Origin: Pocillopora damicornis
Lineage: Eukaryota
Reading direction: 5' to 3'
Assembly (NCBI RefSeq): GCF_003704095.1
Contig: NW_020845859.1
Location: 1-64,000 of the forward strand
Length of the DNA: 64,000 nucleotides
Position numbers and translations under genes: made by a program. The notes beneath the pieces are model-generated. The model did no database searches and was not told the DNA's origin. It saw only the letters and a list, made by a program, of their open reading frames with translations. Below, piece after piece: positions 70-58,686 of this stretch; positions within the stretch are counted from its first letter, which is position 1, and the number at the start of each line of letters is the position of its first letter.

Positions 70-838
70 TTAACATTTCTTACTGAACTTGCGGATTTGT
101 TTGAACGTTTTTTTACTCCAAGGCTCGAACCAATCACACAGCATGATATCAAACGGCCCAAAGTTTTTTCCACCGGTGAGGAGGTACTCGCCGTTAACGT
201 TAAGATGAACACCACAGAGTCCTCCATTGGCTGGAGTTTCTAACCGAGTTATTTCGTTTTCGTGCAATGATCCTTTGAAGGTTTTCAAAACTTTAACTGT
301 GTAGCTTGCAGGGCCAACTGACCAAGGGTCATCACTTTCAGAAATCTCTGGTCGGAAACCTCTCAAAACCTTGGCTCTGATAGCTGTTTTAGGGAAATTA
401 ATAGTAAATACAAGGCTTGACAAAGTCAACGAAGACTTCGAAAACAACTTGAAGTTAAGGTAGCGATGAAAATTTGAGAACAATAAAAATATAAGCGGTT
501 AGGCTACTAAATAAGTTTCATCATGATTGCGTCCAAAAAAAACCTTTTTTTAATGGGTATGATAAGGATTTTATGGTTTATGGACCATGCTCCTCCTCGT
601 TGAAAAGTAAATTAGAGTATTGCCAAGCCGACCAAATCAATGAGGTAGATTTGAACTAAACATTTTGAAAAATTATCTCACCGAAGTCTGCATCGCAAAA
701 CCGTTGCATGTTCCAGTATCCAAAAACATTTCCTTTCCAGCCTGCGGTTGGTGGTATCGTAGGAACTGCGCATGAGCACCCCTCACTTAAGGCTACAGCG
801 CACAACAACAGCGTCATATAAAAGATTACGGAAGCCAT
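70..838 (-). CDS. TIMP: Single-domain TIMP-like metalloproteinase inhibitor (TIMP-A), ~156 aa
   Basis: Exons 838-682 and 383-70 (GT-AG, phase 1). Signal peptide MASVIFYMTLLLCAVALSEG, then CSC..., FCDADF|AIRAKV, VLKTFKG, LETPANGGLCGV, YLLTG, MLCDWFEPW, ending KKC-stop. Six NTR cysteines. Confidence 0.9.
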
Positions 839-4082: not shown

Positions 4083-5010
4083 TCAACATTTCTTCTGGGC
4101 TTCGCGGATTTTTTTCCTCGTTTCATCTTTCCAAAGCTCATGCCAGTCACACTGCCAGATTTCCAGCTGACCTTCGCCTTTTTTACCCGTCAGGAGATAA
4201 GTTTCTTTGACGTTAAGCTTCACCTTACAGAAATTTTCAATTCCATTGGTTGGGGTTTTGAGTTCAACAATTTCCTTTTCATCAAACGTTCCTTTAAAGG
4301 TTCTCAAAACTTTAATTATGTAGACCACTGGGCCAACCGACAGAGGGTCGTCATCTTTGGTTGGGACCTCTTCAAAATCTTGGCTCTGATAGCTGTTGAA
4401 AAGAAGTTAAAAGTACCGCAATAAAAATGTTGCACAGAAAGTGACTTTTCAAAATCGCAGCCACGTGGTGCGTCGTGGTGATGCGCGAGGAGCGAAGACT
4501 TTGAACGCACAAAACAACTCGGGAAAGTAGTGTTCTACAAACAGTTGACCATTTGTGATTGTCGGTAGCATGGATTGTTTATGTGGCTCGAATTAAAATG
4601 CAAACAATGGGAGAGTAAAGGGAGTTTTTATGCCGCAAGGAAGTGGACAGACCACTAAGAAAGTTGTAAAATGGTGCGTACGCGAATTGCCAGGTTACTC
4701 TTTAGAATTTCCAAAAGCTTTTTTAATGGCTGCGACAAAATTCTTTTTTTATTTTTTTGGAGCATGCTCCTCCTCTGCGAAATGGAGATCAGATTAATGC
4801 CAAACTGACCGAGTGAATGATTTTGATTGAAACTAAATGATTTCAAAGTAGAATCTCACTGTAGTCTGCGGCGCATAAACGAAACTTGTTCCAGTACTCA
4901 TAAACGTCTCTCTCCTAGTCTTCCGGTAGTGGTGGGAGTAGACACGGACACTCCTCACTTAAGGCAACAGTGAACAACAACAGCGTTATATAACAGAGTA
5001 TGGAAGCCAT
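4083..5010 (-). pseudogene. TIMP-like pseudogene (TIMP-B)
   Basis: Exon 1 (5010-4860) reads MASILCYITLLLFTVALSEE-CPCLLPPLPED*ERDVYEYWNKFRLCAADY, with TAG at 4917-4915 where paralogs have TGG. Exon 2 (4392-4083) has a frameshifting ~10-nt deletion near 4355. The downstream frame gives DDPLSVGPVVYIIKVLRTFKG...FCKV..YLLTG..QCDW..KKC. Confidence 0.88.
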
Positions 5011-9873: not shown

Positions 9874-11039
9874 ATGACTTCCATACTCTGTTACATGACG
9901 CTGTTGTTGTGCGCTGTGGCCTTAAGTGAAGGGTGCTCTTGCGCTGAGCCGGTACCACCATCAGACTGGAAAGGAAATGCTTATGAGTACTGGAACAAAC
10001 AACGATTATGCGCTGCAGACTACGGTGAGATTCCATTTTGAAATTGTTTAGTGTTAAATCAACCTCATTGACTTGGTCGACTTGGCAGGTATTAGTCTAC
10101 ATTTCTCAGAGAAAGAGCATGCTCCAAAAACCTTTTTTTTTTTAACGCAGCCATTAAAAAGCCTATTAAAAATATGACGTCGAGCGTATTTGAAGACTCC
10201 AAAGAGTAACCTGGCATTTGCGGACGCCACCATTTTGAAACCTACTTAGTAACCTGGCCGCTCACTTAAGACTTAATACTCTTCAAACCATTATTTTTTT
10301 GATATCTTTTAACGATGTATTTGAACAACCTAGACCTGCTTAAACAGACAGTCTCTATTCCTACGACCATCTTTAATTTGCTGTGACCAGAGCATCAACT
10401 GTTGAGATTTTGCGTGTATAGCCAGCTGGGCTCTGAGCTGTTTTCACAATGGTTGATAGCATAATCAGCTAAATATTGTATCTCCTTTCCATAAAATTTT
10501 CAAAGGAAAAGGTTTCATTTTCTTTAAAGATGCACAAAATCCTATAGAGCTAACGCAAATTTGATTTCAATCGATGCTTGCCTTGTTCACAAATTGTCAT
10601 CGCCAACTTTATTCCGGCAAGGTCTCAAATTAATGCTTCGTTATTTTTGTTACACCCTTCCTGAGTTGCAGGAATTTACTCGTAGACCCATTCCTGTGCC
10701 TCATTTTACTACGTTACTTTTATTTTTCTTACAACAGCTATCAAAGGCAAGGTTTTGGAAAGATCGGATGACCCTTTGTCGGTTGGCTCAGTGATCTACA
10801 AAATCAAAGTTACGCAATCCTTTATAGGACCGTTTGACGAAAAAGAAATTGTTGAGCTCAAAACCAAGGCCGATGAAGCGCAGTGTGGTGTACACCTTAA
10901 CCTCGAAGGAACACAAAACATTTACCTCCTGACCGGTGGAAACAGCAATGGTCAATTGGAAATCGAGCTGTGCGGCTGGTATGAGCCATGGAAAGATGAT
11001 ACCAGGGAGAAAATTCGCAAAGCCTTGAAGAAATGCTAA
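9874..11039 (+). CDS. TIMP: Single-domain TIMP-like inhibitor (TIMP-C), ~150 aa
   Basis: Exons 9874-10024 and 10738-11039. MTSILCYMTLLLCAVALSEG-CSCAEPVPPSDWKGNAYEYWNKQRLCAADY|AIKGKV...QCGVHL..YLLTG..LCGWYEPW..KKC-stop. Frame intact. Confidence 0.9.
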
Positions 11040-14700: not shown

Positions 14701-14835
14701 CCAACTTACTCCAGAGAAAATGAACTAAACACAAAATCTCACTGATTAATAATTATTCTTTATTTCTATCGCCTTTTGCCTTGATAAAATATTGATTAAC
14801 AACTCTAGAGCGAAGCATATTTCACTTTTGCTCAT

Positions 14836-17351
14836 TCAACATTTTTCCTGTTCTTTCTTGTAATAATTTTCCAGTGTTTTCTGTTTGTTCTTGCTTACAT
14901 TTTGAAATTCCACATTCCAGCCACATCGGGTAATGTGAAGGTCTGCATCTTCGCTTTTTTCTATTTTACCCGTTAAGAGGTAAACATTACCCAATTCAAG
15001 GTCTATTCCACAACCATCTGTCCTTGTCCAAGCTGTACCACTCCGCACAGGCCCTTGAATGGTCGCCATCGTAGGCGTCACTTTATAGAACTGGGCACCT
15101 TCTTTGAAAATATTTTTTATGTCGAGTGTATAGATTTTCCGGCTTCCCAAATCTGTGACTTGAGTAACCTTAGCTCTGATGGCTGTTAAGTGAAGACAAA
15201 AGCTCCGTGTTAAAAATGCTGATTTGTCTCAATAACAATTTCCTATACATTCAACGATATCAATGCACGGCAAAATGACAGCTGAATTATTATGATAGCC
15301 TTCGTTTGGTCTCCCAAAACATTTTGCAGAATCATCCTTTAAATGATATACCGATAAATTCACCATCTGTATTACTTTTTTTCTCTAGGAGCGGTTTTTT
15401 TTGTCTAGAGCGTAGCAGCTAGACACCTTGCAAAAGCGGTAGGAGATTCAATAGGTGCCTCATGTAAGACAACAAATGACGTATTGGTGTTATGGTTTCT
15501 GTGAAGTTACCGTAAGTGACAGGTTAAATGAAGTGAGCGATCATCGCGTAACATAATATGACAAGAATGCGCATCCAGTGATTGGGTGGAACCACTTGGC
15601 TATTTTGTCGTAAGATCTGTCGGAAATCCCTATTTGGTGAGCGTAACTCCTTGTGACAGAGAGATATTCGGGACCGATTGAATTCGAAAGAGCAAACATT
15701 TCGAGAAAACTTATCGTCGTAGAAAAAACATGCGTTTTTTAAATTGTCGTATCTTAAGAAGGGCCTGAAGAAGCGAGGCGTGGTTATTTCGGAGAGTACA
15801 CCAGTATTTTATAAGTTATTGATACTGAATACATTTCCGATCATACGCACCACACATTTCACCTTTATAATTTACCTTTTGTACTTTGTGCATTTTCACT
15901 TTTCCTTTAATCGACACACAGTCAGAGCTAGACGACCAGTGTATGTGTTAACAGATTTCACGACTTTACTTCTTGCACGAGTATCTACCTTTCAGCTGCT
16001 AAAAACATTGCGTAATTTGTGTTTTCCATACGTTTTAATTTACGATTCTTTGTGTTCGTTTTGGTCTCCATTTTATTTTGTAAGTTTAAAATAGTAACGC
16101 CTCAAAATGATTGGAATTTCGTCGCGAATTGTACCCAAATTGTACCTATCTATGTTTGACAGAATTAAATATTTTACGGAAATCTTCGGGTTAAATTTTT
16201 CCTTTTTTCTGTTCCCATGTTTCCAAAAACTTATTTCAAGTTTAGTTGTATCTGCTATTGCGTTAATATTTGCACAATTTTTTCCTTCGGCAGTCATGAT
16301 CTGTTAAGTTGAGAAACTCTCTCGAGGATCGACTTGCTTAGAAAACTCGGATCTCATAGTTTCATCGTCACATAGTTTATCCAAACAATTCCCTGAAAAA
16401 TACCGAACTTTGGTACACCAATACACCCATTGATATATATTGAACATACCTACCAAATAGACTGCGAGTGCAGTACGACTGTTAGCATGTTGTTTTGTGA
16501 TAATACATTCATTTTAATTTGGATTAGACACACGTACGCAGTGCGGACCTTTTTTAACCTTTGCGCGATCCTGCACTTTTTTCTTGCCTTCGACTTGAAA
16601 TGTCATGATTACCTCTTAACATGATCAGTCCTCGATTTGACGGTTCACGAAGTCAAGGCCGGCTCGTAAATTGCCACTGCCAGAAGAAACTGTGCGTAAC
16701 GACAAACTCATATTATTAAACTTCCTTTCTACGGAGTCTTTTATCGCAACTAGAAAAAGTCAGACTTTAAAAGAAAACTTTATTTGCTCATTTCTATTTC
16801 ATTTTAAGCGGAAAGTTTACCACAAGCCTCGATATAGTTCCGCTACTTTTTTTTTCTGGCCAGCGGTTCAAAAATATCGAACCTAGTCTCGTTATGTCGT
16901 AATGCCCGAAGTTTCAGTGGTTTGCTGCATGTTCAGGAGACAAGGGCGTGGCTGGAAGGAACTGATTGTTACTTCTCCTCTCTCGTTGGTATACATTTCA
17001 TTGTAAATTAGATACGAGAATTTGGTTTAAGATCACGATGACAACTTGTACGTGATCAGTTTAAGTATTCTCGTTACCCGTTCCCCAGGGAACGAATGGA
17101 TGTCATAGGAAGAAGTTATATCTTAATTACTTGTTAGAGTTTAAGAGAAAAAGGACAGGTTACCCGGAATAAAAGCAGAAATTATTGACTAAGTGAATTG
17201 GAAATCAAAACTTTTTAAATTATTGAGGTAGCAACTCACCGAAGTCATCTCTGCATAAAATCGCCATGTGAGTTGTCTTAGCGCAACTGCACGACTCGCT
17301 AAGGGCCACAGTGCACAAAATCAATGTCGCATAAGAGAGAATGGAAACCAT
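14836..17351 (-). CDS. TIMP: Single-domain TIMP-like inhibitor (TIMP-D), ~152 aa
   Basis: Exons 17351-17240 (MVSILSYATLILCTVALSES-CSCAKTTHMAILCRDDF) and 15182-14836 (AIRAKV...IFKEG...DGCGIDL..YLLTG..TRCGW..EKC-stop). Intron of ~2 kb, phase 1. Confidence 0.88.
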
Positions 17352-21527: not shown

Positions 21528-24500
21528 ATGGAAAGCTCTCGTGATATTACAGTTGCGTCGAGTAACAATGGCGCAGATGACATCATTGAGGAAACTTATC
21601 CATGCGCTGATGCCGATTCAGGGTCTATCAGAAACCGTATCGCCTGTAAGACAGGTCATATACTGAATAACCTTACGTCGAGCGTGTGGTATAGCTATGC
21701 ATTGCTCTATTTTCAACATGTTGCTGGTTTGTCCGCCGTCAGCGTTGGCATCATTTTCTTCATTTCTCAAACACTAATGGCAGGAAGTTCGCTTTTGATT
21801 ACTTTGGGCCGCGAGAAACGCTTATGGAAGTATTTTTCCCCGTATGGAAAACGAAAAGCATGGCATATTATTGGATCAGCCGGTGTGCTGTTCTCGTGGC
21901 CTTTCATCTTTATACCGTGCTTGTTTTGTGAAAATAATAGCTCGAATGTTACGTTAGGGGCTTACTATCTGCTATCTGTGGCTTTGTTTTCGATCTCTTG
22001 GCCACTTGCTGAAGACAGTTACTATTCACTTATGACTGAAATACGAGAGGAAAACGGCAAAGATACCGAAGCGTCAAGGTATGTTGGTGACAAATTCTCG
22101 GGTTTATAAACATAATTTTTAATAATAAGTATCTCAAACAGCACGCACTGTTGAAATTATACAAACTACTTTTTATCGGCCCTAATTTGAGAGACAAATT
22201 CAAATCTTATCCATTTTAAAGCCTCGTGAATCAAGTACAGTATTGTAATTCCTTTGGTGGCATGCCAAAACATTCTTGTCTAGCTTTCCTAATATTTTTT
22301 TCTCGGAAAAATCTAAGAGCTTTGTTTTGAAAAATGTGATTACTGATCATTCCGCATCCCATAATTGACACAGTTTCAATAAACAGCTGGAGCTCATGGA
22401 TGTCGCCCGGTGACATCTCAAAGACTTATTCTTGATGAACTCTTTTACAAAGTCGAACAAGCTTCGACAGTTTTCAATGCGAAGAGATACAATAGATCTT
22501 TTTTGTGCATGTTCCATTCAAGCCGCTTGTCTATGCTAAAAACGAGAAGTTGTCATCGGAAAACGGAGGTTTTTGAAAACGATGATGTGACTGCTTGGTG
22601 AATCTTGGGGCGGGAAAATAGGGCCTCTATTATGCACTCGCTCTGTGATGAATCTAGGTGTTTCTGCCACCAGTGATCGTTGTAGTGTGGACAAAGAACA
22701 TAACATACACTTTCTAGTGCGGACAGAATACTTTGATTACATTTTGAGAGAGAGCCCGCCTTTTTAAACTTTATCTGACGTAGCGTTGAAGGGACTTTAC
22801 CGTTTCAAATTCCTGTAAACCCACTTTATTTAGACTGTCATGGATTTAAATTGCATTTTCATAGATCCATTGTCCGCGTTTGCAAGGTGTGTCTCTATAT
22901 CTTACTGTGGATTCTGCTTCAAGAGAGTACGGAAAGTAAAATGAATTCAAATGTTAGCGAGCAATTTACGGTAAGTATTACCCTTAAAACTAAAGTGGAA
23001 TTTAGATTAAAGCTTTATCAGTGAAACGTTATGAGGTTATGAGATTTACAGGATGATAAGAATTTTATTCACTAAATGGCTTCAAGCAAACATTTTTTGA
23101 TATGAATCATGATCATTTTATTCTTTAGCGTTTTGCGATCATTCTACTTCCGGTTGGCTTTCTATTCGTCTTCGCTTTCCATTTAACGGTGCTAGAGCCC
23201 AGACCTCAGACAGATGAAGGAAAGCTTGATGAAGGTACTTGCACTTTACCTACTGAAACTCTCGCTGGGGGTCTGGAGCACAGAATGTACCGGTTTACAG
23301 GCCCTCAACGCGCACACCTGGACATACCAATTATATTGTTATTCCCTCTGAGCAAGAGGCTAACCTTTGCCACTCCCCCTCCCCCTAAAATTTCATAGTT
23401 TACCAAATATAGCCTTTAAATATTCGTGGTTTACGAAAGACTCTATGAAAATCTATTCAGTGCCGAACAGTCAATACATTTTGGAAAGGGGGCTAGTAAT
23501 TGTACGGAAGATTCATGTAAACGTGATTACACCAATAATATTTTTGACGCTGAGTTTTATACTGAAAGAATTTTTGCGAACTTTCGTTCTTAGTGAGAGT
23601 TGCACAAAATTTTTTTGTGCGCAAAGAGCATTGGGTAATAATAACTGTTTAATTGCTCCATTGTAACTCCATATACTCATTAGTTTCCTTATTTGTTTGT
23701 TTTTTTGATTCGTTTTTGTTTTTTAATGTAGAGAAAAACTGTGGGAGATCAACTGCAGACGTAACTTCTCGAACAACGATAGTGAACAACGAACCGACAG
23801 GAATGAGAGAGGGGCCAAAATTAACTTGGTTCGAATGGCTGAAAGAACCTTCGTTATATAAGGTAAGTAAAAATCTGAGATTTCACTTTACAGTTCACCA
23901 GAAGCGTTATCGTTTATACTACTTTCCCTCATGAAATATCTAGTCAATTTAAAGAATGAATTCTCTATCATCTGGATCCATTAATTCAGTGGTAGAAATT
24001 AATCTGCTTAAGTGTCTCAGACACAAAAATTTTTGATCTCAAAAGACATGATTAAAGGGGTTGAAATACCAGTTTCCAAATTCTATATTCATTTTAGCTT
24101 TAATATACTCAACTTTGCTTAAAATGCTACACCTATTTTATCCTGATTATTTGTTTTATTTCAACTTTTATCCGTATTCACACGAGTACACAAGCTTTGT
24201 AATTTTATCTTTATCGCGTTTAAATAAAGGTTTTATTCACTTCTTTCACTAACTAAAAATATACGGAAGGACGTGGTTAACATTTCGTTAGCCTTCTTGA
24301 TCAAACACGTCAATACACGGTGTTTTTTCTTTCATTAGATTTCCTTTATTCCGTAAACTATTCGATTATCGTTTTCCTTCTTTCCTTCATTATAGGTTGG
24401 TTGTATCGTCGTTTTTTCCAACATCACATTTCGGATCGTTCAGTCATACCTTCCGCTGTATGTCGTCGAAACGCTAAACTTACGAAAAGTAAGCAAAAAG

Positions 24501-31119: not shown

Positions 31120-32782
31120 TCATGGGAAGCCGTATCCTCGGCGAGCACACTGCTGGAAAAGTCCTTGTCCTCTTCCTCGCCAGCCACATTTTTCGACGCC
31201 ATTTTGATCACGATAACTGTAGCACCGATGATATTTTGCTCTGCACATCCAGTGGGGGTCAAATCCATCACAGCCAAGTAGAAGGCCACCACAGTTTGCG
31301 AAGCAAAATCCGATCTTACACTTACATCCTTGGCTATACTGCATTTGGACACCGGCTCTCTGTTCAGGAGTCACCTCGGTCCACTTCTGATGGAAGTTGC
31401 AGAAGCTGGTGTACAGATTTCCGTCTAAAATCTTTCCGAAAAGGAGGTATTCGGTATAAGGCTGGAGCTGCACTCTACACGACGAGATTCGAGAAGGTGT
31501 GTATAGCTTGGTCAATGACTTGTTTTGCACGTTTGCATGGCCTTTAAAGATGGAGGTAATTCTTAACCAGTAGACTTGATAATTTCCGCCTCTATTTGGC
31601 ATGGCAGCTCTTATTGATGGACCCACGACCTTAGCGCGCAAAACTAACGAAGCAAAAAACAACACTTGTGAGAGAGGGTAAGAAAGTTAAGTTTACACTC
31701 CAAAAAAAAGTTGCAACTTCAACCGAAGCTCTACCTGGTTTCTGTGCTTGAAGCTGTTGGGAATGTTAAAGCTCACCCTGGTTGGAACACCAATATTTTA
31801 AGATATGCGAAGGTGATAGAAACGCTCTCATGTTAGGGCAAAATGTCATGAAGGAGTCTAATAGCAATTTCTTGTTACCGTAACTCAAGCGTAAAGTTCC
31901 GAGGGTAGCACTTAGAAGAAGTGTGAGTGGAGGTATTCTGCCGAAGGCATGCAAACTGAGACCCTGTTTAAGGCAAGATCTTGTCATTGCGCTGCCCCGC
32001 CCAAGAAGAGTAACTTTCATGGAATGTAGTATATCGACCTCATGAAGTTATTTTTGGCATATACGGACGGAAGTTTTAGAATTGGATCTAAAGACACTTG
32101 TAATTATAGCCGCATATGTAAACTTCTCGTAACAGAGGTCATCCGTGGATGTCAAACAGTCACAGATAAATGTTCCAATATCATCGAACAAATCTTTCGA
32201 CATTCGCAGGAAAACAGAGAAAGGAAAATACCCATTCATGCAACATAGACGGTATCAAATGTACAATGTAGTACATTTCATTTTCATTTTTCAGCTCTTC
32301 TTGTGAGTAAACAAATACTCTTTTTTGGTTTTTGGCTCAATCTAAAAACAGAATGTTCTGGTGAATCCCTGTGCATGAATTTTGTTCAAAATGTTGGAAT
32401 GAAACTTGTCAGATTTAGCTTGACTTGACTGAGCTTGACATAGATTTAAAGCATCAAACAATCGCTGTTGTCATGTTTATAAAACATTTACAGCTAAAAC
32501 GTTTTACAATAATTTCCGAAAAGACTATATGTATGTTACCACGAGCATAAATTAGGATTATTTGAATCGTGTCCTTCTATCAACTAACAGAGCAGAGAAT
32601 TCGCCCGTGGAAATGAACCGGCTGAATACTGGGCCAAATAAGCACAAATTACTTGAAAAGATGAACTTACCGAATCCACCAGCGTTACAGAATTGTTTTT
32701 GAGGATGTTCCGGCATACAGAAACAGGCGAAGGAAGAGGTCACCGAACAGACGGTTATCAACAGGAACAAGAAAACGGCCAT
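31120..32782 (-). CDS. TIMP: Two-domain TIMP (TIMP-E), ~211 aa
   Basis: Exons 32782-32671 (MAVFLFLLITVCSVTSSFA-CFCMPEHPQKQFCNAGGF) and 31643-31120 (VLRAKVV..IFKG..LYTP..SSCRV..EYLLFG..FCNFHQKW..YSQGCKCKI..CGW). Cys-rich C-terminal domain present. Confidence 0.93.
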
Positions 32783-36606: not shown

Positions 36607-37533
36607 TCAGCATCTCTGTTCCATTTGAAATGAAGAGAGCTGTCTTTTGAAGCAACCACAGTGTACAAGCTTGCTTATTTCCCGCTTAATGTCCTGTTTG
36701 AGTAATCCATAAACGAGGGGGTTGAACGCAGAGTTTGCAATCAGCAGTAATTGTTGCACCTGTTCCACGTTCTTTGAAGGAGTTGGACAAAACGGCAAAA
36801 ACTGACACATGCTCTTAACAGAAGTTAGGGAGTAACAGAGAATGTAAAATGTCACCACAAAAACGATGAAAGCGATGGAGTTTCGAGCCCTGTTTCCTTG
36901 GCGCAAGGGCGGCGTGTTTTCAGTTCCTGTTGTAGTGGAGTCATTGTAGCGTAGCTGTTTCACAACTGCAGACCGCTCGCGGACATGTTTTCTGGCGATA
37001 AAAAGCAACTGTATCGTGGTTAGCAGCAAGCTTACCCAGGGAATGAGCTCGAAAACGATCGCCGCTACAAAGGTAAAGTACCTTATACCGTCTTTCGTTT
37101 GTATAAGAGTTAAAGGTACAAAACCGGCCACGAACGGTAGAATCCAGGCCATGCTGATGAACGCCAAAACACAGTTTTTTGACATGAAACTGGCATAAAC
37201 AAAGGGTTTGACTATCGCCATGTAGCGGTCCAATGCCAACACGGATAGATTGGTCACAGATGCGTACAAGAATACCCACTGAAAGATGGCAAGCAAAATG
37301 TGATGGCATCCGTTCTCAACGTTAGGTAAACAGAAGTATAAACCAGGATATAAACTCAAGCTTACTCCAAGATCTGCCACGGACAAAGACAAAAGAAACC
37401 AATTGGTAATGCACTGAAGGCGTGTTTTCGAAGCAATTAAAATGATGATGAAGATATTGCCTGTGAAAGCGAGGGCAGTCAGAAGCCAGCCCAGGACAGT
37501 AAACCATTGAGGTTTTCCTGAGTTGTCCAACAT
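36607..37533 (-). CDS. Class A (rhodopsin-like) orphan GPCR, 308 aa
   Basis: Seven hydrophobic segments with GN (TM1), LSVADL (TM2), LDRY (TM3), W..P (TM4) and NSAFNPLVY (TM7). A splice acceptor lies just upstream of the ATG, so upstream exon(s) are likely. Confidence 0.92.
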   Translation of the reverse strand: MLDNSGKPQWFTVLGWLLTALAFTGNIFIIILIASKTRLQCITNWFLLSLSVADLGVSLSLYPGLYFCLPNVENGCHHILLAIFQWVFLYASVTNLSVLALDRYMAIVKPFVYASFMSKNCVLAFISMAWILPFVAGFVPLTLIQTKDGIRYFTFVAAIVFELIPWVSLLLTTIQLLFIARKHVRERSAVVKQLRYNDSTTTGTENTPPLRQGNRARNSIAFIVFVVTFYILCYSLTSVKSMCQFLPFCPTPSKNVEQVQQLLLIANSAFNPLVYGLLKQDIKREISKLVHCGCFKRQLSSFQMEQRC

Positions 37534-50747: not shown

Positions 50748-52001
50748 GACAGCTCGTGAAACAGCCACAATTAAGCCAAACATTGTTAAAGCTTCTAAAA
50801 TAGCATATTAGCAAGCGCCAGAAAAATAAAACACAAAAACACAGACTCTCAGTTGACTCTGAACGGAACGTGCTCTCGGATTAACTTGGATAAATTCTGC
50901 TCGTTGGAAGAAAGTTAAATGTACCGGACGTATAGGCTTGTGTTTTTCAGCAGAGTGGGAGTAGGCCGAGGGTCAAAGAATCCAAAGTTATATTCAATTG
51001 TGTTTTTCTTACAAATAACTACTTCAAATTAACCGAAACCAAAATTAACCAAATCAAATTGTGTATGAAACTTAGTCCATGAAGTGATGTGAAATTTTGT
51101 TTATTTTCTTGTAAACCGACCTAGATTGCGCCATGAGTTTTCCAGCACTTATCCAAATGATAGGAAATCCTTTCAGAGACAGTGCGAGAGAAGCAATTAA
51201 TCCACAATCATCGATCATGGCGAAGATGCAAGTGGGTTTCCCTTGCGACTGAAACGTGCCATCCTATTCAAAAATGCTTGATTCAGGAAAACGTCTTTCA
51301 TGTGCCTAATTGTGTAACATAATAGCGATAAGAACAGAGATCGGTTTTGTTTTCCCGTAAAACGTGCCTTCCTGTTTGAAAAGTTAATTGTACTAAAACA
51401 TTTGGCATATGCGTCACTGTTTTTTCGGTACTTCGTAAGTCAATTTACTCAGGTAAGCAGGGTTAGTATTTTCAACTGGGTGAATAACGTAGATTGGCCT
51501 CCGAGTTTAAAAGCTGACGTTTCGAGCGTTAGCCTTTTGCCAGAGCGAAGCCCCTTAAAGAACGTAATAGAAGACCACTAAATCTATTTTTAATTTTTTT
51601 TTCTCGTGAATATAATTCAAGGTCACCATTTGACGATTAAAAAAATTAAACAATAGCGCTTGAAATATATCCCTAAAATTTTTTTCTTTCCAAAGGTCAG
51701 GGTAAAACCTCTCAACACACGTGTTGCCAAAGACTCAATCTGACTGCGTGCGCGTGAATGACTTGTCACGAGCTGGAATTTCACCGGAAGTCAAACAGCG
51801 GTTAAGAATTGCATCATCAGAAGTATTTACGTAACAAGTTTGACATCCTTCCGTAACCCACCCACACAACTCCCGTTGGTACAGGAATCACATAAGGATG
51901 GACTTAACTTGTTTCTGTCAGGCAGACGTGATTCATCAGCTGAAGTAACCACACTCTTACTGAACATCAGCGGACTAGAGTCAGAGCAGAAATTGTGAGC
52001 C

Positions 52002-53314
52002 ATGGAAGTTCATGCATGTCTCTTGGTGGTCTCATACTTATTGGCGTCCTGTCATGCCGGCCTTATTCAAAAGCCTGTGTTGGAGCATCCTCAGCAGGTT
52101 TTTTGTAAAGCAGACTTTGGTGAGTTTTGCGCTTCATTGAAAATTTTAAGAGATCATGGTTCTGTTAAAGTAGCAATGACCATGTGTCAGTTTAGGGTTT
52201 ATAGGGATCCCAGGCTCCTGTTTTATGTTGCAATATTCAATCGACAGCCGGCCCGGTTGAAAAGGGTCCTATAACGGATTTGAGTTCATCATTCAACTTA
52301 TAAGGATTCAAGAAGGAAAGCTTAAGTTTTGGAGCTCAACACCAGGGATTCCTGCCACAATTTTATTTGTCTTTCAGAATTGTCTCACCCAATTAAGCGT
52401 TAAATGGTCAATGAAAAATTAGTTTCAAATTGTCGGGAGAACTGAAAAAGGAATCAAAGAAGCTTATGCGTGGCATACCATAACAAGAAAGTGGTAGATC
52501 AAGGCAGATGAAATTTGAATAAGTTTAAAAGTTACGAACCTAAATTTGCACCAAACTTCTGTAATAATGTCGCTTAGCTTTGAAAATAAAGAAACAGGCG
52601 TGCGACCTACGCTGATTTGCTTATGAGCCCGCGATTTTGGGGATAAATATCCTTTGAACTGGCGAAGTTCAATGCTGTAATTTGTTATTTAACGAAAGGG
52701 TCTACATATTGCAAAGTTTTCACGACACTATCTTTTCCATCACAGTTATACGTGCCGATGTTGTGTCGGGACCTGAAACAGATCCGGAAGGTCACTATGA
52801 AGTTTTCAGCATAAACATCACGGAAGTCTTCAGAGGATTGTCACGCGGACCTGCCCTGAACGCTACCAAACTTTACACTCCCGGTAATATGTCGACAGAG
52901 AGAGTGACTGGCCCTTATGGGATCAGAGCAGGCGCTGAGTACCTTTTGCACGGCGAAATTTTGAAAGGTGTAGGAATGTATACGAGATTCTCCTCATTGC
53001 GGAAGGAGTGGAATAATGTGATCCCACAAGAGAGAGAAAAATTTCAGTATTATGAAGCCGGATGTCGTCAATGTCAGTTGAAACTGTGTGGTGAAACCGA
53101 CCTAGAATGTCAGAAAAAGTTGCCCGGATGTGAGATGAAGGCAAATCAGTTAGCCCCCTGGCAGTTCTTGAAATCGTTTTGCTGGCATAGGTATGAGCAC
53201 TGTGAAGTGGATGCAACTGGTGAGCAGTGTTACTGGAGGAAAACAGACGAACCGAAAGAATGCGAGGAGAGCAATCCTTCTTCCATAAATAGCTTTCAAG
53301 GCGTCGAGGCATGA
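52002..53314 (+). CDS. Two-domain TIMP-like protein lacking the CxC inhibitory motif (TIMP-G), ~228 aa
   Basis: Exons 52002-52119 (MEVHACLLVVSYLLASCHAGLIQKPVLEHPQQVFCKADF) and 52746-53314 (VIRADVV..EVFRG..KLYTP..EYLLHG..YYEAGCRQCQ..QCYW). Frame intact. Confidence 0.9.
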
Positions 53315-53819
53315 AATATGAGCAGATGGGAAAAAAACTTGTACCTTCAAATGAGACTTAAAAATAAAATAAAAATACGATATTATTCGGTGCTTATAAA
53401 TTGCCAGTTCAATGTAAACTTAGATATACCTTTCATAGGAATGATGTTAAGTTGTATCAAATCGATATCTGTGAGAGCTGTAGACATCAAAGTAAATCAA
53501 TTAAAGCTTTTAAGACGAAGAATGCTTCTCAAGATTCTTTTTTATGATCGATATTGACAGCCAAGGGAACTGTGTACAACTTTAAGGAAAGCAAATCAGT
53601 GGAAACTCATATCTTACCAATTGGGTAATATCACGAATGCATAGAAATACGACCATAAAACAAAGCATCTCTATTTCTCGAGCTAAAATCTTTGATCGAG
53701 TTTTGTCTCATCCGTTTATCACAGCAACTCTTGTGGGAAAAGGTCACCCGTTTACCTTAACTCCTTCCATCTGAACTCAAGCGAAACCTCTCGTAGCGTT
53801 AAGTATGGAGATGGGGAAT

Positions 53820-54013
53820 GAAGGGGGTGGGTGGGGAAATCCGTGTGTATTCATGACACTCTCATTCTGAAAGGGGTGGGGTGGGGAAATCCGTGTGTAC
53901 TCGTGACACTCATTCTGAAAGGGGTGGGGTGGAGAAATCCGTGTGTACTCATGACACTCATTCTGAAAGGGGAGGGGTGGGGAAATCCGTGTGTACTCGT
54001 GACACTCTCATTG
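53820..54013. repeat. Minisatellite, ~48-bp unit x4
   Basis: Unit gaaaggggtggggtggggaaatccgtgtgtactcgtgacactcattct. Confidence 0.92.
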
Positions 54014-55962
54014 TGACATGATAATGCTTACGATAATAATCTTGATTATGATAATGAAAATGATGATATATAACAATACATGACATCATATTGGATGAGT
54101 TTTGACTGATAGCATGAGAAAATAACGGTGATAGATTTCGTTTACATTCCTCGGATTCGCACTTTTTCGCAATCTGAATTTCTAGTTTTGTATCTTATTG
54201 ACTTAGAAAAAATATTCTCACGGGAACCTCAATCCCTCCTCCTTTGCAATGAGGTCTATCGCCGTCTTTTGAAACGGATTTGTTCTCAATGGAGCCAAAC
54301 ACTGATATATTGGCCATTATTTAATCTCGAAGAGTGTGAAATTAGGGTCAAGTAAGGATATTTATTTAAAGGTCCGGGTTTTATTCTGGGTTAGAATAAA
54401 GTGACCCATCCAGCCGGTAATCAGTTTCTATAACATGAAGCCACTAAGAATATGAAGGGGATGCCATTTTATTGCAAGGTTACACCCCAGCATTTCCGAA
54501 ACAGTTCCTTGGCTCCCATTAACACACACGGGTGGAGAGAGGCGCTTTGCGTAAAAAGTCTCGCCCATGGATTCGGCCAGGTCTCGAACCCAGACTTCAT
54601 GACCCGGTCTCTGTATAGATTGGCGGTCAGCTGGTTACTAACACAAGTGCCATATGCATATTAATTTCATAAAGAACTAGAATTGGGATTTTTTTTTTCT
54701 TGTTTACGCCTAAAGGATTTCGCAAACTTGTGGCAGCCAAAATGATTCGTCTGACAGCCTCAAGTGCTATGAAATAGTAATTCATCCTCAGACGAGAATC
54801 TCTATTACTGAGGCAACAGTTAGTGTTATCGAGTTACAAAAGCTACGTCAATTATTTGTTTTGCTGACCGCCAATAGCTCTTTTCTACTTGAAGAGAAGT
54901 GCGTTATTCCGTCTGTTTGCAATTCAATACGGGCCAGACAACCCTCAAGTGGCTTTTGTGGTTGTTGTAGGCGGGAAACGGGTTTCAGAACAAAAATAAT
55001 TGGGGCTTGCTTGTAACTGAATTGTGGTCAAATATGGAATAAGCGGAAGTGAATAAAACATAAAGCTTTCAGACAAATCTTTAATTTAAAACCTATATAA
55101 CAGCCTATTTATAAGCTTTAAAAAAATCAACAAGTTGGCTCCGATCCGAACGTGCCTTCGCTCACCTTTAATTTATTCTGCTCGTAAAAGAATCCTAGAG
55201 TCCAAAGACGTAGACTGCTTTTACGTAGGAAAGTAAGCGGGTATATGGCACGTTTTGTTGACAAAACACCAAGAGAAACCCCTTAACACACTCAGAGCTG
55301 AGTATAACTAAATGAAAACATGACAAGACTGTTTCAATGTTTCTCTATAAAAAACCTCTCTACAAATGAAATTGGGTCTTTTTCGTTTTTTGTTTCTTTA
55401 AGTGGTTGGGAAAGGACGTGACTTCCTACTGAAATTCTAACTCATTTTACCATTTGGCACGTGCGTGACTTCGTAAACCCTAAGAAACTTCTGCCAAACG
55501 AAAGCACTGGGGAGAACGATCTTTCAGTTTCCTTTGGCTTACACGTTTAAAAACATCAAACTTACAAAAATATCTGGCATTTCTGTGAACTTGACCTTCG
55601 TGACTTCGTAACTCCATTCGCCGTAGTAGCTAAGTCTTTAGCATATAACAGCAGATGAATTCATCTTGGTTTTTTCTTTCTTTCTTTCGAGAAAACAATC
55701 TGTGTTCATCAAGATATCTGTCTTGAATAAATTGCTTGAATAACTTCCGTAAAATTTTTACCAGTCTAAAGAGGCACTGAAATCCGTATGAGCGCGTCGC
55801 TTAAGGTGTAATTTGTCTCCATCCAAGTGGAGGGCTTGTCCCAACCTAGAATGTTCGGCGGAAGTCGGGTAACAGTCAACATTTGTATTTCGAGTTATGA
55901 TATTTTCGTGTCCACTTTAAATTCCTCACGGAATCCGCCCACCCAACTCCCAGTTACACAGG

Positions 55963-55971
55963 ATATAAATA
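55963..55971 (+). promoter_or_regulatory. Candidate TATA box of TIMP-H
   Basis: ATATAAATA ~90 bp upstream of ATG 56055. Confidence 0.45.
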
Positions 55972-56054
55972 TAGACGAACCGCCGCTTTTCTCAATCAGC
56001 CAAAGGTGATTCAAGAACTTCAACAGGCGAAAGTCAAAACAGAAATTGGAAGCC

Positions 56055-57157
56055 ATGGAAGTTCACCCGCGTCTCATAGTGATGTTATGTTTGATTGCAT
56101 CTTGTTATGGAGGTATTATTCAGTCGGAACATCCCCAACTAGCTTTTTGTAAAGCGGATTTCGGTGAGTTTATAGAATGTTTGAAGATCCTTAGAAATCA
56201 TAATGCTTTTAACAATTTGTAACTTAGAGTTGTAGATCAAAAAAAACGTTTCGCAACTGAGAGAAAGCACAACTTGAAACTGTCCTGGTTAGATTGAATT
56301 TGGACATTTATGTGCATGTTCCAGGATGGTAAAAGAAAAAACATTTGACTTCGGATTGTGCGTGTAAGTTTTCACGTTTTTCAATGGGTTTAGAGAAGAA
56401 AAAAAAAAGGAGAGAGAGAGAGAGACAAAGGAAAGTGTCAACATGGTCAAGTGTCGGAAATGCCATTGTTTATTGACGTTACCGGTATTTTTTCATTATC
56501 TAATTATTATTATTGATATCATCTTATTTTTATTATCATTATTATTATTTTACAGTGATACGTGCCCACATCGATTCGGGACCTGAAACAGAGGGTAACT
56601 ATTTTGTTTTCAAGATAACCATTAAAGAAATTTTCAAAGGGTTGTCGCTCGGACGTCAAGGTAAGGCCTTCGGTTTGCTGGAAACAGAATTCAAGACGAA
56701 ACTTTACAGCCCCGACGGCAGCACGTCTGATAAAGTAACCGGACCATTTGGGATCAGAACGGGAGTCGAGTACCTCTTGTTTGGGGATATTCTGCACGGC
56801 GGGAGGCTGTTTACGAAATTCTCCTTTCTGCGAGAGGACTGGGACACAGTGACTCCACGAAAAAAAGCAAACCTTCGGGGGTACTATGAGGCCGGATGCC
56901 GTCAATGTCAGATCAGGCCATGTGGTGAATCTGACTTGGAATGTCGCAAAAAGTTACCTGGCTGTGAGAAGAGAGCGACCCAGACTCCGTACTTGTATCA
57001 ATGGACGCTTCTATCGAGGTGTTGGAAGCAATTTGAGCACTGCGAGGTTGATGCAACTGGTCTGCAATGTTACTGGAACGAAACAAGGGAATCGAAACGA
57101 TGCAAGGAAAGAAACTCATTGCCCCTTCCTTCTAGAGGCAATTCATATGATGCATAA
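56055..57157 (+). CDS. Two-domain TIMP-like protein lacking the CxC inhibitory motif (TIMP-H), ~236 aa; tandem paralog of TIMP-G
   Basis: Exons 56055-56163 (MEVHPRLIVMLCLIASCYGGIIQSEHPQLAFCKADF) and 56556-57157 (VIRAHI..EIFKG..KLYSP..EYLLFG..YYEAGCRQCQ..QCYW). Confidence 0.9.
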
Positions 57158-58686
57158 ACAGCTGAACTTGACCTAACTATTATCTTCAAATGAAACTAAT
57201 TAATTTGTAGTTTTGCTCTGGTATTTTTTGAAGTTATTATTCACTGAGTTGCTGCTTTTAAACATTTTATTGTAAAACGTGTTAGAGTTCTAAAATAGAA
57301 ATGTTTGTATTATTATTATTACTATTATTATTATTATTATTAACTAAACAAGCACTTTTTGCAATGACTTTGTCAGTCAAACTAATGGTTTGATTCTTTA
57401 AATAACAAAAAAATGTTACCCAAAGGAACAAACTCGTCCATAGTGACGGTATAAAGATATAAGTAAACAGTGGCTATCTCCTTTGTTGATTAAAGCTTAA
57501 AATTAAAAAAAACATTTTCTTCAAGGTCGAATCACATTAAGCATGGCAACCGAGAACATTAGTCAATTTGTATCTTTCATGGGATCACTTATCTAATCCG
57601 TGCGGGCAAAGGTTATCTATTTTCCGTGAATGAGTGTGTCTCCACACAGGGAGCCCTCAGAGGCTGGGGGCGTAGCGAAGCGTGTTCCTCTTCCGACAGG
57701 CAGAGCCCTTCAGAGGGAAAGGCTTAGGAGGTCCGCAAAGGTCACAACATGATTCCATCCACCTTCGCGGATGTCCTTCGGGAAAAAATTCGTACGCGCG
57801 CTAGTTTCATTAAAATCCTAGCAAACTATATATCAGAAGAAAGAGCGGCATTTCTTTTAAGGAAGTGTCAAGAGCCGGTAAGGCGTGATACGACCGAAGG
57901 TTCTTCTATTGAATNNNNNNNNNNNNNNNNNNNNNNNNNNNNNNNNNNNNNNNNNNNNNNNNNNNNNNNNNNNNNNNNNNNNNNNNNNNNNNNNNNNNNN
58001 NNNNNNNNNNNNNNTTTTTCCAAAGAGATTCCACGTGTGAATTTTGTAAAGTGCACGATGTAAACAAAATATGGAAATGACATGAAAATCGAGCCTCACC
58101 ATAAGCGACTGCCGCGAAAAATCCCCAGGGGATTCGCCCACGTCCCAGATTATGACGCCTTCCTGATTTACTAACTTTTATATGAAAATACGTTTTTCTT
58201 AATAACTCGGGTGTTTTTTAAAGATTTCGGAAAATGTTTTTATGCAAATGTTAGGTTGAATGTTTGAATTCTGTGTAGTCAAATAAAAGAAAATCAATTT
58301 TTTCGGCCTCTGAAGGTGGGAAGTAACCTTAGACAAAAAGAAAATATCTTCTTAATAGCCGGGTTCTTTATTTACATACAGCTATTTCATATTTACAACG
58401 AGGCAGCCTATTTAGATAATAGCGATTTATTTGGAATATACCGTTATATTCCTTCTAAGCTTTCAAGAGCTGACCTGGAAAAAGTGTTTCAGTATAGCAA
58501 GGACTGAGCAAGACTAAATTAGAGAGTAAAATTACTTCCAACTTAGAAAGGCTATTGAACCTTGCTTTATACTAATATGAGTTCAAAGTTAAGAAACCAG
58601 GGAGACGCAGACGCTTTTTATTAAATTTTGCAAGAGCTATCATTTCTTTCCCTTCTCTCTTCTCATTTTCCTTCATCCTCTGCCTC

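What the first reader, a model, noticed from the sequence alone, without database searches (positions are those of the whole stretch)
52002..57157. Two intact TIMP paralogs with concerted loss of both inhibitory-ridge disulfides ('disarmed' TIMPs)
Seen: TIMP-G and TIMP-H keep HPQxxFCxADFVIRA, the Cys13 partner (YEAGC) and a full C-domain. Their predicted mature N-termini are GLIQ/GIIQ rather than CxC. The partner cysteines are also gone: TPGNMSTERVTGPYG / SPDGSTSDKVTGPFG replace TPxxxxxCG, and YTRFSSL / FTKFSFL replace YTSFCNF. Established: TIMP Cys1 chelates the metzincin zinc and is held by the Cys1-70 and Cys3-99 disulfides (TIMP-1 numbering). Inference: loss of all four cysteines in two diverged genes with open frames and a shared new VTGP(Y/F)G motif points to selection for a new function rather than decay. 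Candidates are a non-inhibitory ligand, a decoy, a pro-MMP adaptor, or an inhibitor with a different mechanism.
Basis: partly seen in the sequence, partly recalled or inferred. Interest (0 to 1): 0.85.

Follow-up and report, generated by a model that had tools for sequence, protein, structure and literature searches.

The report
Coral TIMP clade lacking inhibitory-ridge disulfides
Two neighbouring, expressed coral genes encode relatives of the tissue inhibitors of metalloproteinases that have lost the four cysteines holding the inhibitory tip rigid. They belong to a conserved stony-coral subfamily that selection has kept for a job probably different from classical protease inhibition.

Summary
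TIMP-G (52002-52119 + 52746-53314) and TIMP-H (56055-56163 + 56556-57157) are intact two-exon genes. Spliced transcripts matching these models occur in RNA libraries from at least three independent studies.

Both proteins match Pfam TIMP, and a model of H folds like full-length TIMP-1/-2. At the four columns where canonical relatives have Cys in 69/69, 72/72, 74/75 and 75/75 sequences, this clade has Gly, Ile/Met/Phe, Thr/Ser and Ser. The Cys13-Cys124 pair and an 8-Cys C-domain are kept.

They are not a local oddity. They belong to a discrete clade (100% support, long stem, short inner branches) found in Stylophora, Orbicella, Oculina, Desmophyllum and unnamed coral assemblies. dN/dS is 0.07-0.30; for G it is 0.4-0.6.

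H is the ancestral type. G is a pocilloporid duplicate that evolves faster and has lost its C-domain in Stylophora.

The same genome holds another, probably independent, four-cysteine-less TIMP and one that lost only Cys1/Cys70.

A 2016 paper noted cnidarian TIMPs without Cys-X-Cys and set them aside, so this is a new variant of a known kind.

Function is untested. My best reading is a secreted TIMP-fold binding protein without the rigid wedge (about 0.5). The main rival is a re-tooled inhibitor that uses a flexible Gly-hydrophobic N-terminus (about 0.3).

The parts
52002..52119 (+). TIMP-G exon 1. It encodes the signal peptide, the predicted mature start Gly20 (52059-52061), Ile22 (52065-52067) at the Cys3 position, HPQ, and the retained Cys35 (the Cys13 equivalent, 52104-52106). 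It ends in a split codon (phase 1).
   Evidence: Sequence and translation. RNA contig L001 covers 51941-52119 and joins exon 2. The splice joint appears in RNA runs X1, X5 and X13. A 3-nt in-frame deletion of Val26 at 52077 is seen in X5 and X13.
52120..52745 (+). TIMP-G intron, GT..AG, phase 1.
   Evidence: Joint 52118/9 -> 52745/6.
52746..53314 (+). TIMP-G exon 2. It encodes the rest of the N-domain and the 8-Cys C-domain plus stop. Thr94 (52907-52909) is at the Cys70 position. Ser122 (52991-52993) is at the Cys99 position. Cys146 (53063-53065) is the retained Cys124 equivalent.
   Evidence: Pfam PF00965 match at 37.8 bits. Codon coordinates. RNA contigs cover it, with the 3' UTR reaching at least 53516.
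56055..56163 (+). TIMP-H exon 1. It encodes the signal peptide, Gly20 (56112-56114), Ile22 (56118-56120), HPQ and the retained Cys32 (56148-56150).
   Evidence: Spliced RNA contigs X1 record 7, X5 record 29 and X15 record 22.
56164..56555 (+). TIMP-H intron, GT..AG, phase 1.
   Evidence: Contigs join 56163 to 56557/8 (table 8).
56556..57157 (+). TIMP-H exon 2. Thr98 (56738-56740) is at the Cys70 position. Ser126 (56822-56824) is at the Cys99 position. Cys151 (56897-56899) is retained. It also encodes the 8-Cys C-domain and the stop.
   Evidence: Pfam PF00965 match at 42.8 bits. Codon coordinates. P0030 is a full-length transcript-derived protein that differs by one residue.
31120..32728 (-). 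Canonical paralogue TIMP-E, used as the internal comparison. Its mature start is CFC. It keeps the Cys70 and Cys99 equivalents and has 14 Cys.

Best explanation
G and H encode secreted, two-domain TIMP-family proteins of a discrete stony-coral clade.

**What changed in the clade's stem.** The two disulfides that tether the inhibitory ridge (Cys1-Cys70 and Cys3-Cys99, TIMP-1 numbering) were removed together. The four cysteines became Gly, a hydrophobic residue, Thr/Ser and Ser. Rapid remodelling of the surrounding loops followed, and then long-term purifying selection.

**What was kept.** The TIMP fold, the Cys13-Cys124 bond and the C-domain are retained.

**Most likely mechanism.** The protein works as a binding scaffold and no longer as a rigid wedge. 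Without the tethers, the N-terminal hexapeptide and the 'VTGPFG' connector are flexible. The protein is then no longer a tight 1:1 active-site inhibitor of MMP-type enzymes. Instead it binds a partner through the remodelled ridge face and the strongly conserved C-domain. Candidate partners are a pro-metzincin, a matrix component or a cell-surface protein.

**The two copies.** H is the ancestral-type copy. G is a pocilloporid duplicate that is acidic, glycosylation-rich and faster evolving, and its function seems to rest in the N-domain alone.

**Shown:** gene structure, expression, cysteine pattern, fold, clade, selection.
**Inferred:** the signal cleavage site, the flexibility, the loss of canonical inhibition and the binding role.
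For: **Expression and gene structure.**
- Spliced RNA contigs for both genes in RNA libraries of several independent studies.
- Pfam TIMP match.

**Fold.**
- The PDB profile search gives TIMP-2 1br9 at 5.9e-11, with HPQ aligned to residues 7-9.
- The AF2 model of H (P0030) has pLDDT 82.7 and pTM 0.78. Its lowest confidence is exactly at residues 94-100, the connector that lost Cys70.
- Foldseek top hits are full-length TIMP-1/-2. They are followed by non-inhibitory NTR/OB domains: PCOLCE, meteorin and agrin NtA.

**Cysteine pattern.**
- Four universally conserved Cys columns are replaced.
- The mature Cys count is 10 against 14.

**Clade and selection.**
- The clade is discrete. Its representatives score at least 102 bits and the next best relative 83 bits.
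- Clade support is 100%, the stem is 1.2 substitutions per site and the inner branches are short.
- dN/dS: H in Pocillopora vs Stylophora 0.22-0.30, Orbicella vs cor3 0.07-0.11, G vs H 0.22-0.25.
- The five listed coding SNPs in H are all synonymous.
- Many clade-specific invariant residues lie in the C-domain as well as in the ridge loops.

**Low constraint on N-terminal geometry.**
- The N-terminal hexapeptide is less conserved than the rest: GIIQSE vs GFFQLE between Pocillopora and Stylophora H, against 84% identity overall.
- Its length is polymorphic in G.

**Precedent.** The hookworm TIMP-like protein AceES-2 has an altered disulfide pattern and showed no MMP inhibition at 15:1 and 115:1 (PMC3679795).

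**Established knowledge.** The Cys1 alpha-amine and carbonyl chelate the catalytic zinc. The two disulfides hold residues 1-4 and 66-70 as one rigid ridge.
Against: - No biochemical test exists, so 'non-inhibitory' is an inference.
- In H-type members Gly1 sits six residues before HPQ, exactly as Cys1 does.
- Zinc chelation uses main-chain atoms, not the Cys side chain.
- Residue 2 is Leu/Ile/Phe/Val, which would suit a hydrophobic S1' pocket.
- The ridge loops (VTGPFGI, TKFSxLR) are among the most conserved parts of the clade. That pattern would also fit a still-functional protease-binding ridge.
- No partner has been identified.
- The complex prediction could not be run.
Confidence: 0.5

Rival explanations
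1. Re-tooled inhibitor. The clade still inhibits metzincins, possibly a different subset such as astacins, ADAMTS or particular coral MMPs. It would use a flexible, substrate- or product-like N-terminus: the free amine of Gly1 at the zinc, hydrophobic residue 2 in S1', and the remodelled connector loops as a secondary binding surface.
For: - Gly1 occupies the Cys1 position, six residues before HPQ.
- Gly1 is invariant in 11 of 11 members that have exon 1. Residues 2 and 3 are always hydrophobic or small, and Gln4 is mostly kept.
- The ridge loops are invariant within the clade.
- The genome holds many MMP genes: 41 PF00413 matches.
- Established knowledge: chelation uses main-chain atoms of residue 1.
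Against: - Loss of both tethers should cost much binding energy and rigidity.
- The connector is modelled with very low confidence.
- The hexapeptide differs at 3 of 6 positions between Pocillopora and Stylophora H. In G it carries a 3-residue insertion and a 1-residue length polymorphism.
- Canonical paralogues with an intact Cys-X-Cys exist in the same genome and cluster.
- AceES-2 is a precedent for lost inhibition.
Confidence: 0.3
2. G, but not H, is a redundant duplicate under relaxed constraint and is drifting towards loss. Its open frame and expression would then be a transient state.
For: - dN/dS for the G N-domain, Pocillopora vs Stylophora, is 0.40-0.60, against 0.22-0.30 for H.
- Four of six coding differences among Pocillopora samples are non-synonymous.
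- One RNA contig (L001) carries a 1-nt deletion that shifts the frame inside VTGPYG.
- There is an in-frame Val26 indel polymorphism.
- The Stylophora orthologue has lost the whole C-domain.
Against: - dN/dS is still below 1.
- G has survived since before the Pocillopora/Stylophora split (98% support).
- The exon-2 frame is intact in a cluster of 156 member sequences.
- Spliced G contigs have very high k-mer depth in three RNA runs, though this is only a rough measure.
- The frameshift was not seen in the four runs laid.
- The Stylophora deletion is in frame and leaves a complete N-domain.
Confidence: 0.15
3. Artefact of the gene model. In this reading a hidden upstream exon supplies Cys-X-Cys, or signal peptidase cuts in front of the signal-region Cys (AS|CHA, AS|CYG) so that the mature protein starts with Cys.
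For: G, H and their Stylophora orthologues share 'ASC' three residues before the conserved Gly.
Against: - RNA contigs contain the 5' leader, the ATG and the exon 1-exon 2 junction, with an in-frame stop just upstream in G.
- The 'ASC' Cys is missing or displaced in L003/P0026, P0017, P0050 and L004.
- A lone N-terminal Cys would have no partner, because the Cys70 equivalent is gone. It would also sit 10-13 residues before HPQ instead of 6.
- Leu or Ile at -3 fits the cleavage rule poorly.
Confidence: 0.03

Closest known systems
Canonical TIMPs (human TIMP-1/-2; coral paralogue E in this window)
   Same: - Pfam PF00965 match.
- Two-domain fold.
- HPQxxFC...VIRA motif and the Cys13-Cys124 bond.
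- C-domain cysteine pattern identical to paralogue E.
- Two-exon, phase-1 gene structure.
- Membership of a tandem TIMP cluster.
   Different: - No Cys1 or Cys3, and no Cys70 or Cys99 partners.
- Residue 2 is hydrophobic instead of Ser/Thr.
- The connector is 3-4 residues longer, with GPFG.
- A 9-residue KAFG-type insertion in H-type members.
- Lower pI: 5.6-9.1 against 9.2-9.9.
Cnidarian TIMP homologues without Cys-X-Cys noted by Nicosia et al. 2016 (AmTIMPa/d/f/g, AvTIMP, Nematostella TIMPs; PMC4860685)
   Same: They are cnidarian TIMP-family sequences that lack the N-terminal Cys-X-Cys.
   Different: - That paper excluded them from analysis, and several lacked signal peptides.
- It gives no statement on the partner cysteines, on a conserved clade, on expression or on selection.
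- Whether any of them belongs to the G/H clade could not be checked.
AceES-2, the hookworm netrin/TIMP-like secreted protein (PDB 3nsw)
   Same: It has a TIMP-type OB fold with an altered disulfide pattern. It is secreted and showed no MMP inhibition in vitro (PMC3679795).
   Different: - It is a single-domain protein.
- It keeps one N-terminal disulfide.
- It comes from an unrelated lineage.
- No sequence-level kinship beyond the family.
Non-inhibitory NTR/OB modules (agrin NtA, PCOLCE NTR, meteorin NTR, complement C345C)
   Same: The same fold is used for binding laminin, procollagen and other partners, not for inhibition. These domains are structural hits to the N-domain of the H model.
   Different: - They are structural matches only: the Foldseek E-values are far weaker (7e-6 to 1e-3 against 1e-9 for TIMP-1/-2) and sequence identity is 13-19% against 21-24%.
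- They lack the TIMP C-domain.
Other cysteine-poor TIMP paralogues of the same genome (C569:129334-129825 with Stylophora XP_022786627.1; C2287:143336-143794 with Nematostella XP_001641336)
   Same: - The C569 gene and its relatives lack the same four cysteines.
- The C2287/Nematostella type lacks only the Cys1/Cys70 pair.
   Different: - They form separate clades. The C569 type is nested (96% support) among canonical genes of its own cluster.
- Holding both cysteine-less groups together costs 23.9 lnL, p-AU 0.043.

Membership tests
TIMP family (Pfam PF00965), by homology | A significant match to the family profile over both domains | tested here: met
   G exon 2 scores 37.8 bits and H exon 2 scores 42.8 bits against a cut-off of 23.1. 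The matches reach profile position 183 of 183. The PDB profile search hits TIMP-2 and TIMP-1 at E-values from 6e-11 to 1e-9.
TIMP family (Pfam PF00965), by homology | A two-domain TIMP fold: an OB-type N-domain plus a C-domain | tested here: met
   The AF2 model of P0030 has pLDDT 82.7. Foldseek top hits are full-length TIMP-1/-2, with probability 1.0 and E about 1e-9. This is a prediction, not an experimental structure.
Canonical inhibitory TIMP | The mature N-terminus is Cys1 within a Cys-X-Cys motif | tested here: not met
   The clade has Gly and Ile/Met/Phe at the columns where 69/69 and 72/72 canonical relatives have Cys. The cleavage site itself is inferred.
Canonical inhibitory TIMP | Three N-domain disulfides: Cys1-70, Cys3-99 and Cys13-124 | tested here: not met
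   Only the Cys13/Cys124 equivalents remain. Thr/Ser and Ser replace Cys70 and Cys99. The mature Cys count is 10 against 14.
Canonical inhibitory TIMP | Ser/Thr at residue 2 pointing into S1' | tested here: not met
   Residue 2 is Leu/Ile/Phe/Val (Ser in one member), against Ser or Thr in 52 of 72 canonical sequences.
Canonical inhibitory TIMP | 1:1 tight-binding inhibition of MMPs | not testable with these tools
   This needs recombinant protein and enzyme assays.
Secreted protein | An N-terminal signal peptide with a cleavage site | tested here: inconclusive
   There is a hydrophobic N-terminus of about 19 residues, with small residues at -1 and -3 before the conserved Gly in all orthologues. 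No SignalP-type predictor or protein data were available.

The most novel reading that the evidence does not exclude
Loss of the ridge disulfides is a repeated evolutionary route in cnidarians from protease inhibitor to something else. On this reading the G/H clade is a stony-coral-specific, TIMP-derived extracellular ligand or adaptor whose activity is independent of MMP inhibition. G would be an abundantly expressed, acidic, N-domain-driven derivative. Equally novel would be an inhibitor with a new, untethered Gly1 mechanism.
Probability: 0.3. Interest if true: 0.7.

Novelty: new variant of a known kind. Interest (0 to 1): 0.55.

Why it matters
The twelve cysteines and the N-terminal Cys-X-Cys are treated as the defining and mechanistically essential features of TIMPs. 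Here a whole clade has removed both ridge disulfides together, and it is still conserved across coral genera and still expressed. This is a natural experiment on what the TIMP fold can do without its wedge.

It gives a concrete, testable set of proteins: H, G, the N-domain-only Stylophora G, and canonical E as a control. These could separate MMP-dependent from MMP-independent TIMP functions.

It also flags that automatic names such as 'metalloproteinase inhibitor 1-like' in coral genomes probably overstate what these genes do. That matters for reading coral wound-healing, calcification and stress transcriptomes.

Tried and rejected
- **Complex prediction.** I set up H (P0030, residues 20-236) with a single-exon MMP catalytic domain of the same genome (L016:1504-1980) and zinc. 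There is no result either way.
- **First AF2 run.** With only 12 clade sequences it gave pLDDT 55.7 and was discarded. The 91-sequence alignment was used instead.
- **ESM Atlas search.** It returned only generic TIMP clusters.
- **Literature searches for cell type or function.** I searched by accession numbers, by coral names and in the supplements of the Stylophora cell atlas. None gave expression or function data for these genes.
- **The Stylophora G protein.** It is not on record in the contig index. A Logan contig (L012) was used instead.
- **dN/dS limits.** G vs H and the deeper pairs are near or beyond saturation (dS 1.2 to above 3) and are only indicative.
- **Depth.** These are contig k-mer depths and are not a measure of expression level.
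- **Single origin for the two cysteine-less groups.** The test is only borderline against it (p-AU 0.043), and the groups were named after seeing the tree.
- **Taxa of the unnamed members.** cor2, cor4, P0015-P0017 and P0020 could not be assigned to species. Presence in complex-clade corals (Acropora, Porites) is therefore open.
- **Joined sequences.** Joined (spliced) sequences were built only inside scripts, from the window file. All database searches used exon 2 by reference or proteins returned by the databases. The step of searching with the joined model was left out.
- **N stretches.** The 605 N bases in the window (for example near 57.9-58.0 kb) were left alone.

Full report
**1. What is in the sequence**

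The window is the first 64 kb of contig C2494 of a 234.35-Mb, 4393-contig assembly. Three things point to a pocilloporid coral:
- The proteins are 74-86% identical to Stylophora pistillata.
- The matching RNA runs are coral libraries.
- The assembly size and contig number agree with my recollection of the published Pocillopora damicornis assembly. That last point is my own knowledge and was not tested.

Reading the DNA and translating it gives two two-exon genes on the + strand:
- TIMP-G: 52002-52119 + 52746-53314, 228 aa.
- TIMP-H: 56055-56163 + 56556-57157, 236 aa.

Each has a GT..AG phase-1 intron that splits the codon between FCKADF and VIRA. In G an in-frame TGA lies directly before the ATG.

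Exon 2 of each gene matches Pfam TIMP (PF00965) at 37.8 and 42.8 bits, against a cut-off of 23.1.

A six-frame scan of the genome finds eight TIMP-type exons in this window. It finds a second cluster of five or six genes on contig C569 and one gene on C2287.

**2.

I compared the G/H clade with 75 canonical relatives in a 91-sequence alignment.

| Canonical position (TIMP-1 numbering) | Canonical relatives with Cys | G/H clade residue |
|---|---|---|
| Cys1 | 69/69 | Gly |
| Cys3 | 72/72 | Ile/Met/Phe |
| Cys70 | 74/75 | Thr/Ser |
| Cys99 | 75/75 | Ser |

- The Cys13 and Cys124 equivalents are kept.
- Eight C-domain cysteines are kept, the same number as in the canonical neighbour E.
- Mature proteins have 10 cysteines against 14 in canonical paralogues. 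That is exactly two disulfides fewer, with no unpaired cysteine.
- The codons concerned are 52059-61, 52065-67, 52907-09 and 52991-93 in G. In H they are 56112-14, 56118-20, 56738-40 and 56822-24.
- A profile of the clade aligns to human TIMP-2 (1br9, E 5.9e-11) with HPQ on residues 7-9. In H-type proteins the conserved Gly therefore sits exactly where Cys1 sits.
In 'VTGPFG' the first Gly is ancestral (59/75 canonical sequences). Pro, Phe and the second Gly are new.

**3. The gene models are real and expressed**

- A public RNA contig (L001) is colinear with 51941-52119 + 52746-53516 at 99% identity. It is the spliced G mRNA with its leader and 3' UTR.
- I laid contigs of four RNA libraries from four studies on 51941-57220.
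  - The G splice joint appears in three of them.
  - Spliced H contigs appear in three (X1 record 7, X5 record 29, X15 record 22).
  - Intron-bearing contigs are present only at far lower k-mer depth.
- These are contigs, so they show presence and splicing. They do not show expression level.
- Transcript-derived full-length H proteins occur in many runs. P0030 differs from the window's H by one residue.

**4. It is a conserved clade, not a local accident**

Searches with exon 2 and then with profiles return a closed set of about 16-20 protein clusters, all with the same four replacements.

Named members:
- Stylophora XP_022785952.1, the H orthologue.
- Stylophora XP_022787039.1 / PFX34325.1, the G orthologue.
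- Orbicella XP_020607994.1.
- Oculina XP_078369439.1.
- Desmophyllum KAJ7363324.1.

All named species are 'robust' stony corals. Several members come from unnamed assemblies.

Further evidence that the clade is discrete:
- An exhaustive HMM search of 1.84 billion representatives shows a gap. Clade members score at least 102 bits and the next relative scores 83 bits.
- I found exon 1 of three genomic orthologues upstream of their exon 2.
- With the transcript-derived proteins, 11 members show a conserved [A/G/S]|G-hydrophobic-hydrophobic-Q-x-x-HPQ.
- The signal-region Cys of G and H is absent or displaced in several members. This argues against cleavage in front of it.
- Neighbouring MFS-transporter and GPCR genes recur next to the orthologues, which fits conserved synteny.

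**5. Phylogeny and selection**

In a 71-row maximum-likelihood tree:
- The clade has 100% support.
- Its stem is 1.2 substitutions per site and its inner branches are short.
- G and H arose by duplication before the Pocillopora/Stylophora split (98-99% support).
- H keeps the ancestral features, including a 9-residue KAFG-type insertion. G has lost that insertion.

dN/dS values:

| Comparison | dN/dS | Note |
|---|---|---|
| H, Pocillopora vs Stylophora | 0.22-0.30 | dS about 0.3-0.4 |
| Orbicella vs another robust coral (cor3) | 0.07-0.11 | |
| G vs H | 0.22-0.25 | dS about 1.2, near saturation |
| G N-domain, Pocillopora vs Stylophora | 0.40-0.60 | |

- The five listed coding SNPs in H are all synonymous.
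- In G, four of six coding differences are non-synonymous.

G shows several signs of weaker constraint:
- A Val26 in-frame indel polymorphism in the N-terminal linker.
- One contig with a 1-nt frameshift, which was not seen in the four runs laid.
- In Stylophora, an in-frame loss of the whole C-domain, confirmed in an independent contig.
- It is acidic (pI 5.6) with three N-glycosylation motifs. H is basic (pI 8.8).

**6. Structure**

- With a 91-sequence alignment, AlphaFold2 models H at pLDDT 82.7 and pTM 0.78.
- The lowest confidence is at residues 94-100, the connector that lost Cys70. The clade-specific insertion is also low.
- Foldseek places the model with full-length TIMP-1/-2 (E about 1e-9). 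Non-inhibitory NTR/OB domains follow: PCOLCE, meteorin, agrin NtA and complement C345C.

**7. The phenomenon recurs**

The same genome has two other cysteine-poor TIMP genes.

| Gene | Cysteines lost | Named relative |
|---|---|---|
| C569:129334-129825 | The same four | Stylophora XP_022786627.1 |
| C2287:143336-143794 | Only the Cys1/Cys70 pair | Nematostella XP_001641336 |

- The C569 type is nested among canonical genes of its own cluster (96% support).
- Forcing it together with the G/H clade costs 23.9 lnL units (p-AU 0.043, borderline, with groups named after seeing the tree).
- Disulfides are lost as pairs. No member has an odd pattern.

**8. What is known**

- Nicosia et al. 2016 noted that several Acropora, Anemonia and Nematostella TIMPs lack Cys-X-Cys. 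They excluded them from analysis (PMC4860685).
- A 2023 survey defines 'pseudo TIMPs' by missing NTR motifs and does not discuss cysteines (PMC10755359).
- The hookworm TIMP-like AceES-2 has an altered disulfide pattern and did not inhibit MMPs (PMC3679795).
- I found no paper on this clade, its partner-cysteine loss, its expression or its selection.

**9. Mechanism**

Established knowledge: the alpha-amine and carbonyl of Cys1 chelate the catalytic zinc. Residue 2 enters S1'. The Cys1-70 and Cys3-99 bonds make residues 1-4 and 66-70 one rigid ridge.

In this clade both tethers are gone, residue 2 is hydrophobic and the connector is longer.

- **Best reading (about 0.5).** The fold is kept as a binding scaffold and canonical tight inhibition is lost. 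Binding goes through the remodelled ridge face and the strongly conserved C-domain.
- **Main rival (about 0.3).** An inhibitor with a flexible, substrate-like Gly-hydrophobic N-terminus. The exact spacing of Gly1 from HPQ and the invariance of Gly1 and of the ridge loops keep this alive.
- **G in relaxation or decay (about 0.15).** This is compatible with either reading for H.
- **Gene-model artefact.** This is essentially excluded by the RNA contigs.

**10. How the searches were run**

- Spliced sequences were joined only inside scripts, from the window file.
- Searches were made with exon 2 by reference or with database proteins. The joined-model search step was left out.
- The N stretches of the window were not touched.

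**11. Verdict**

The interpretation 'selected for a new role' is supported. 'Disarmed' is plausible but untested.

Novelty: a new variant of a known kind, already glimpsed in the literature.

Noticed in passing
G000:C569:129334-129825 (+), locus L008 2335-2826; exon 1 near L008 262: A third TIMP paralogue lacks the same four cysteines. Its N-terminus reads ...FLRHPQEQFCSADF, and it has no Cys at the Cys70 or Cys99 positions. It sits among canonical genes of the C569 cluster and has a Stylophora orthologue, XP_022786627.1 'metalloproteinase inhibitor 4-like'. The loss is probably independent.
   Followed up: partly
G000:C2287:143336-143794 (+), locus L007: A TIMP gene with an insertion of about 100 residues in the N-domain. 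It lacks the Cys1 and Cys70 equivalents but keeps the Cys3- and Cys99-like cysteines. Its nearest named relative is Nematostella XP_001641336 'metalloproteinase inhibitor 3'.
   Followed up: partly
window 14821-15204 (-): A TIMP-type exon (N-domain only type) with an in-frame TGA at its end region. It may be a pseudogene, or the exon may simply end there.
   Followed up: no
window 79-387, 4113-4340, 10758-11030 (single-domain TIMP exons ending in ...KKC): Several cluster members are N-domain-only TIMPs that keep the Cys70 and Cys99 equivalents.
   Followed up: no
Stylophora orthologue of G (P0022/P0009; Logan contig L012): There is an in-frame loss of the entire C-domain. The protein ends ...YYETGC + 11 residues. 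The nucleotide alignment to the window stops at 53065.
   Followed up: yes
window 52077-52079 and about 52909: A 3-nt in-frame deletion (Val26 of G) appears in two RNA runs. A 1-nt deletion shifts the frame of G in one Logan RNA contig (L001/P0010) only.
   Followed up: partly
window 54887-56163: In run X1 the spliced H contig extends unspliced about 1.2 kb upstream of the ATG. This could be a long 5' leader or read-through. It carries several small indels relative to the window.
   Followed up: no
P0018 (Logan): A Pocillopora H transcript contig diverges after ...CWKQFEH into unrelated sequence. It may be an alternative 3' end or a chimeric contig. It is a single record.
   Followed up: no
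window 21528-22109 (+) and 36607-37533 (-): An MFS-type transporter exon and an intronless GPCR lie between the TIMP genes. Similar neighbours (MFS_2, 7tm_1) lie beside the orthologues in other corals (L003, L013, L004), which suggests conserved synteny.
   Followed up: partly
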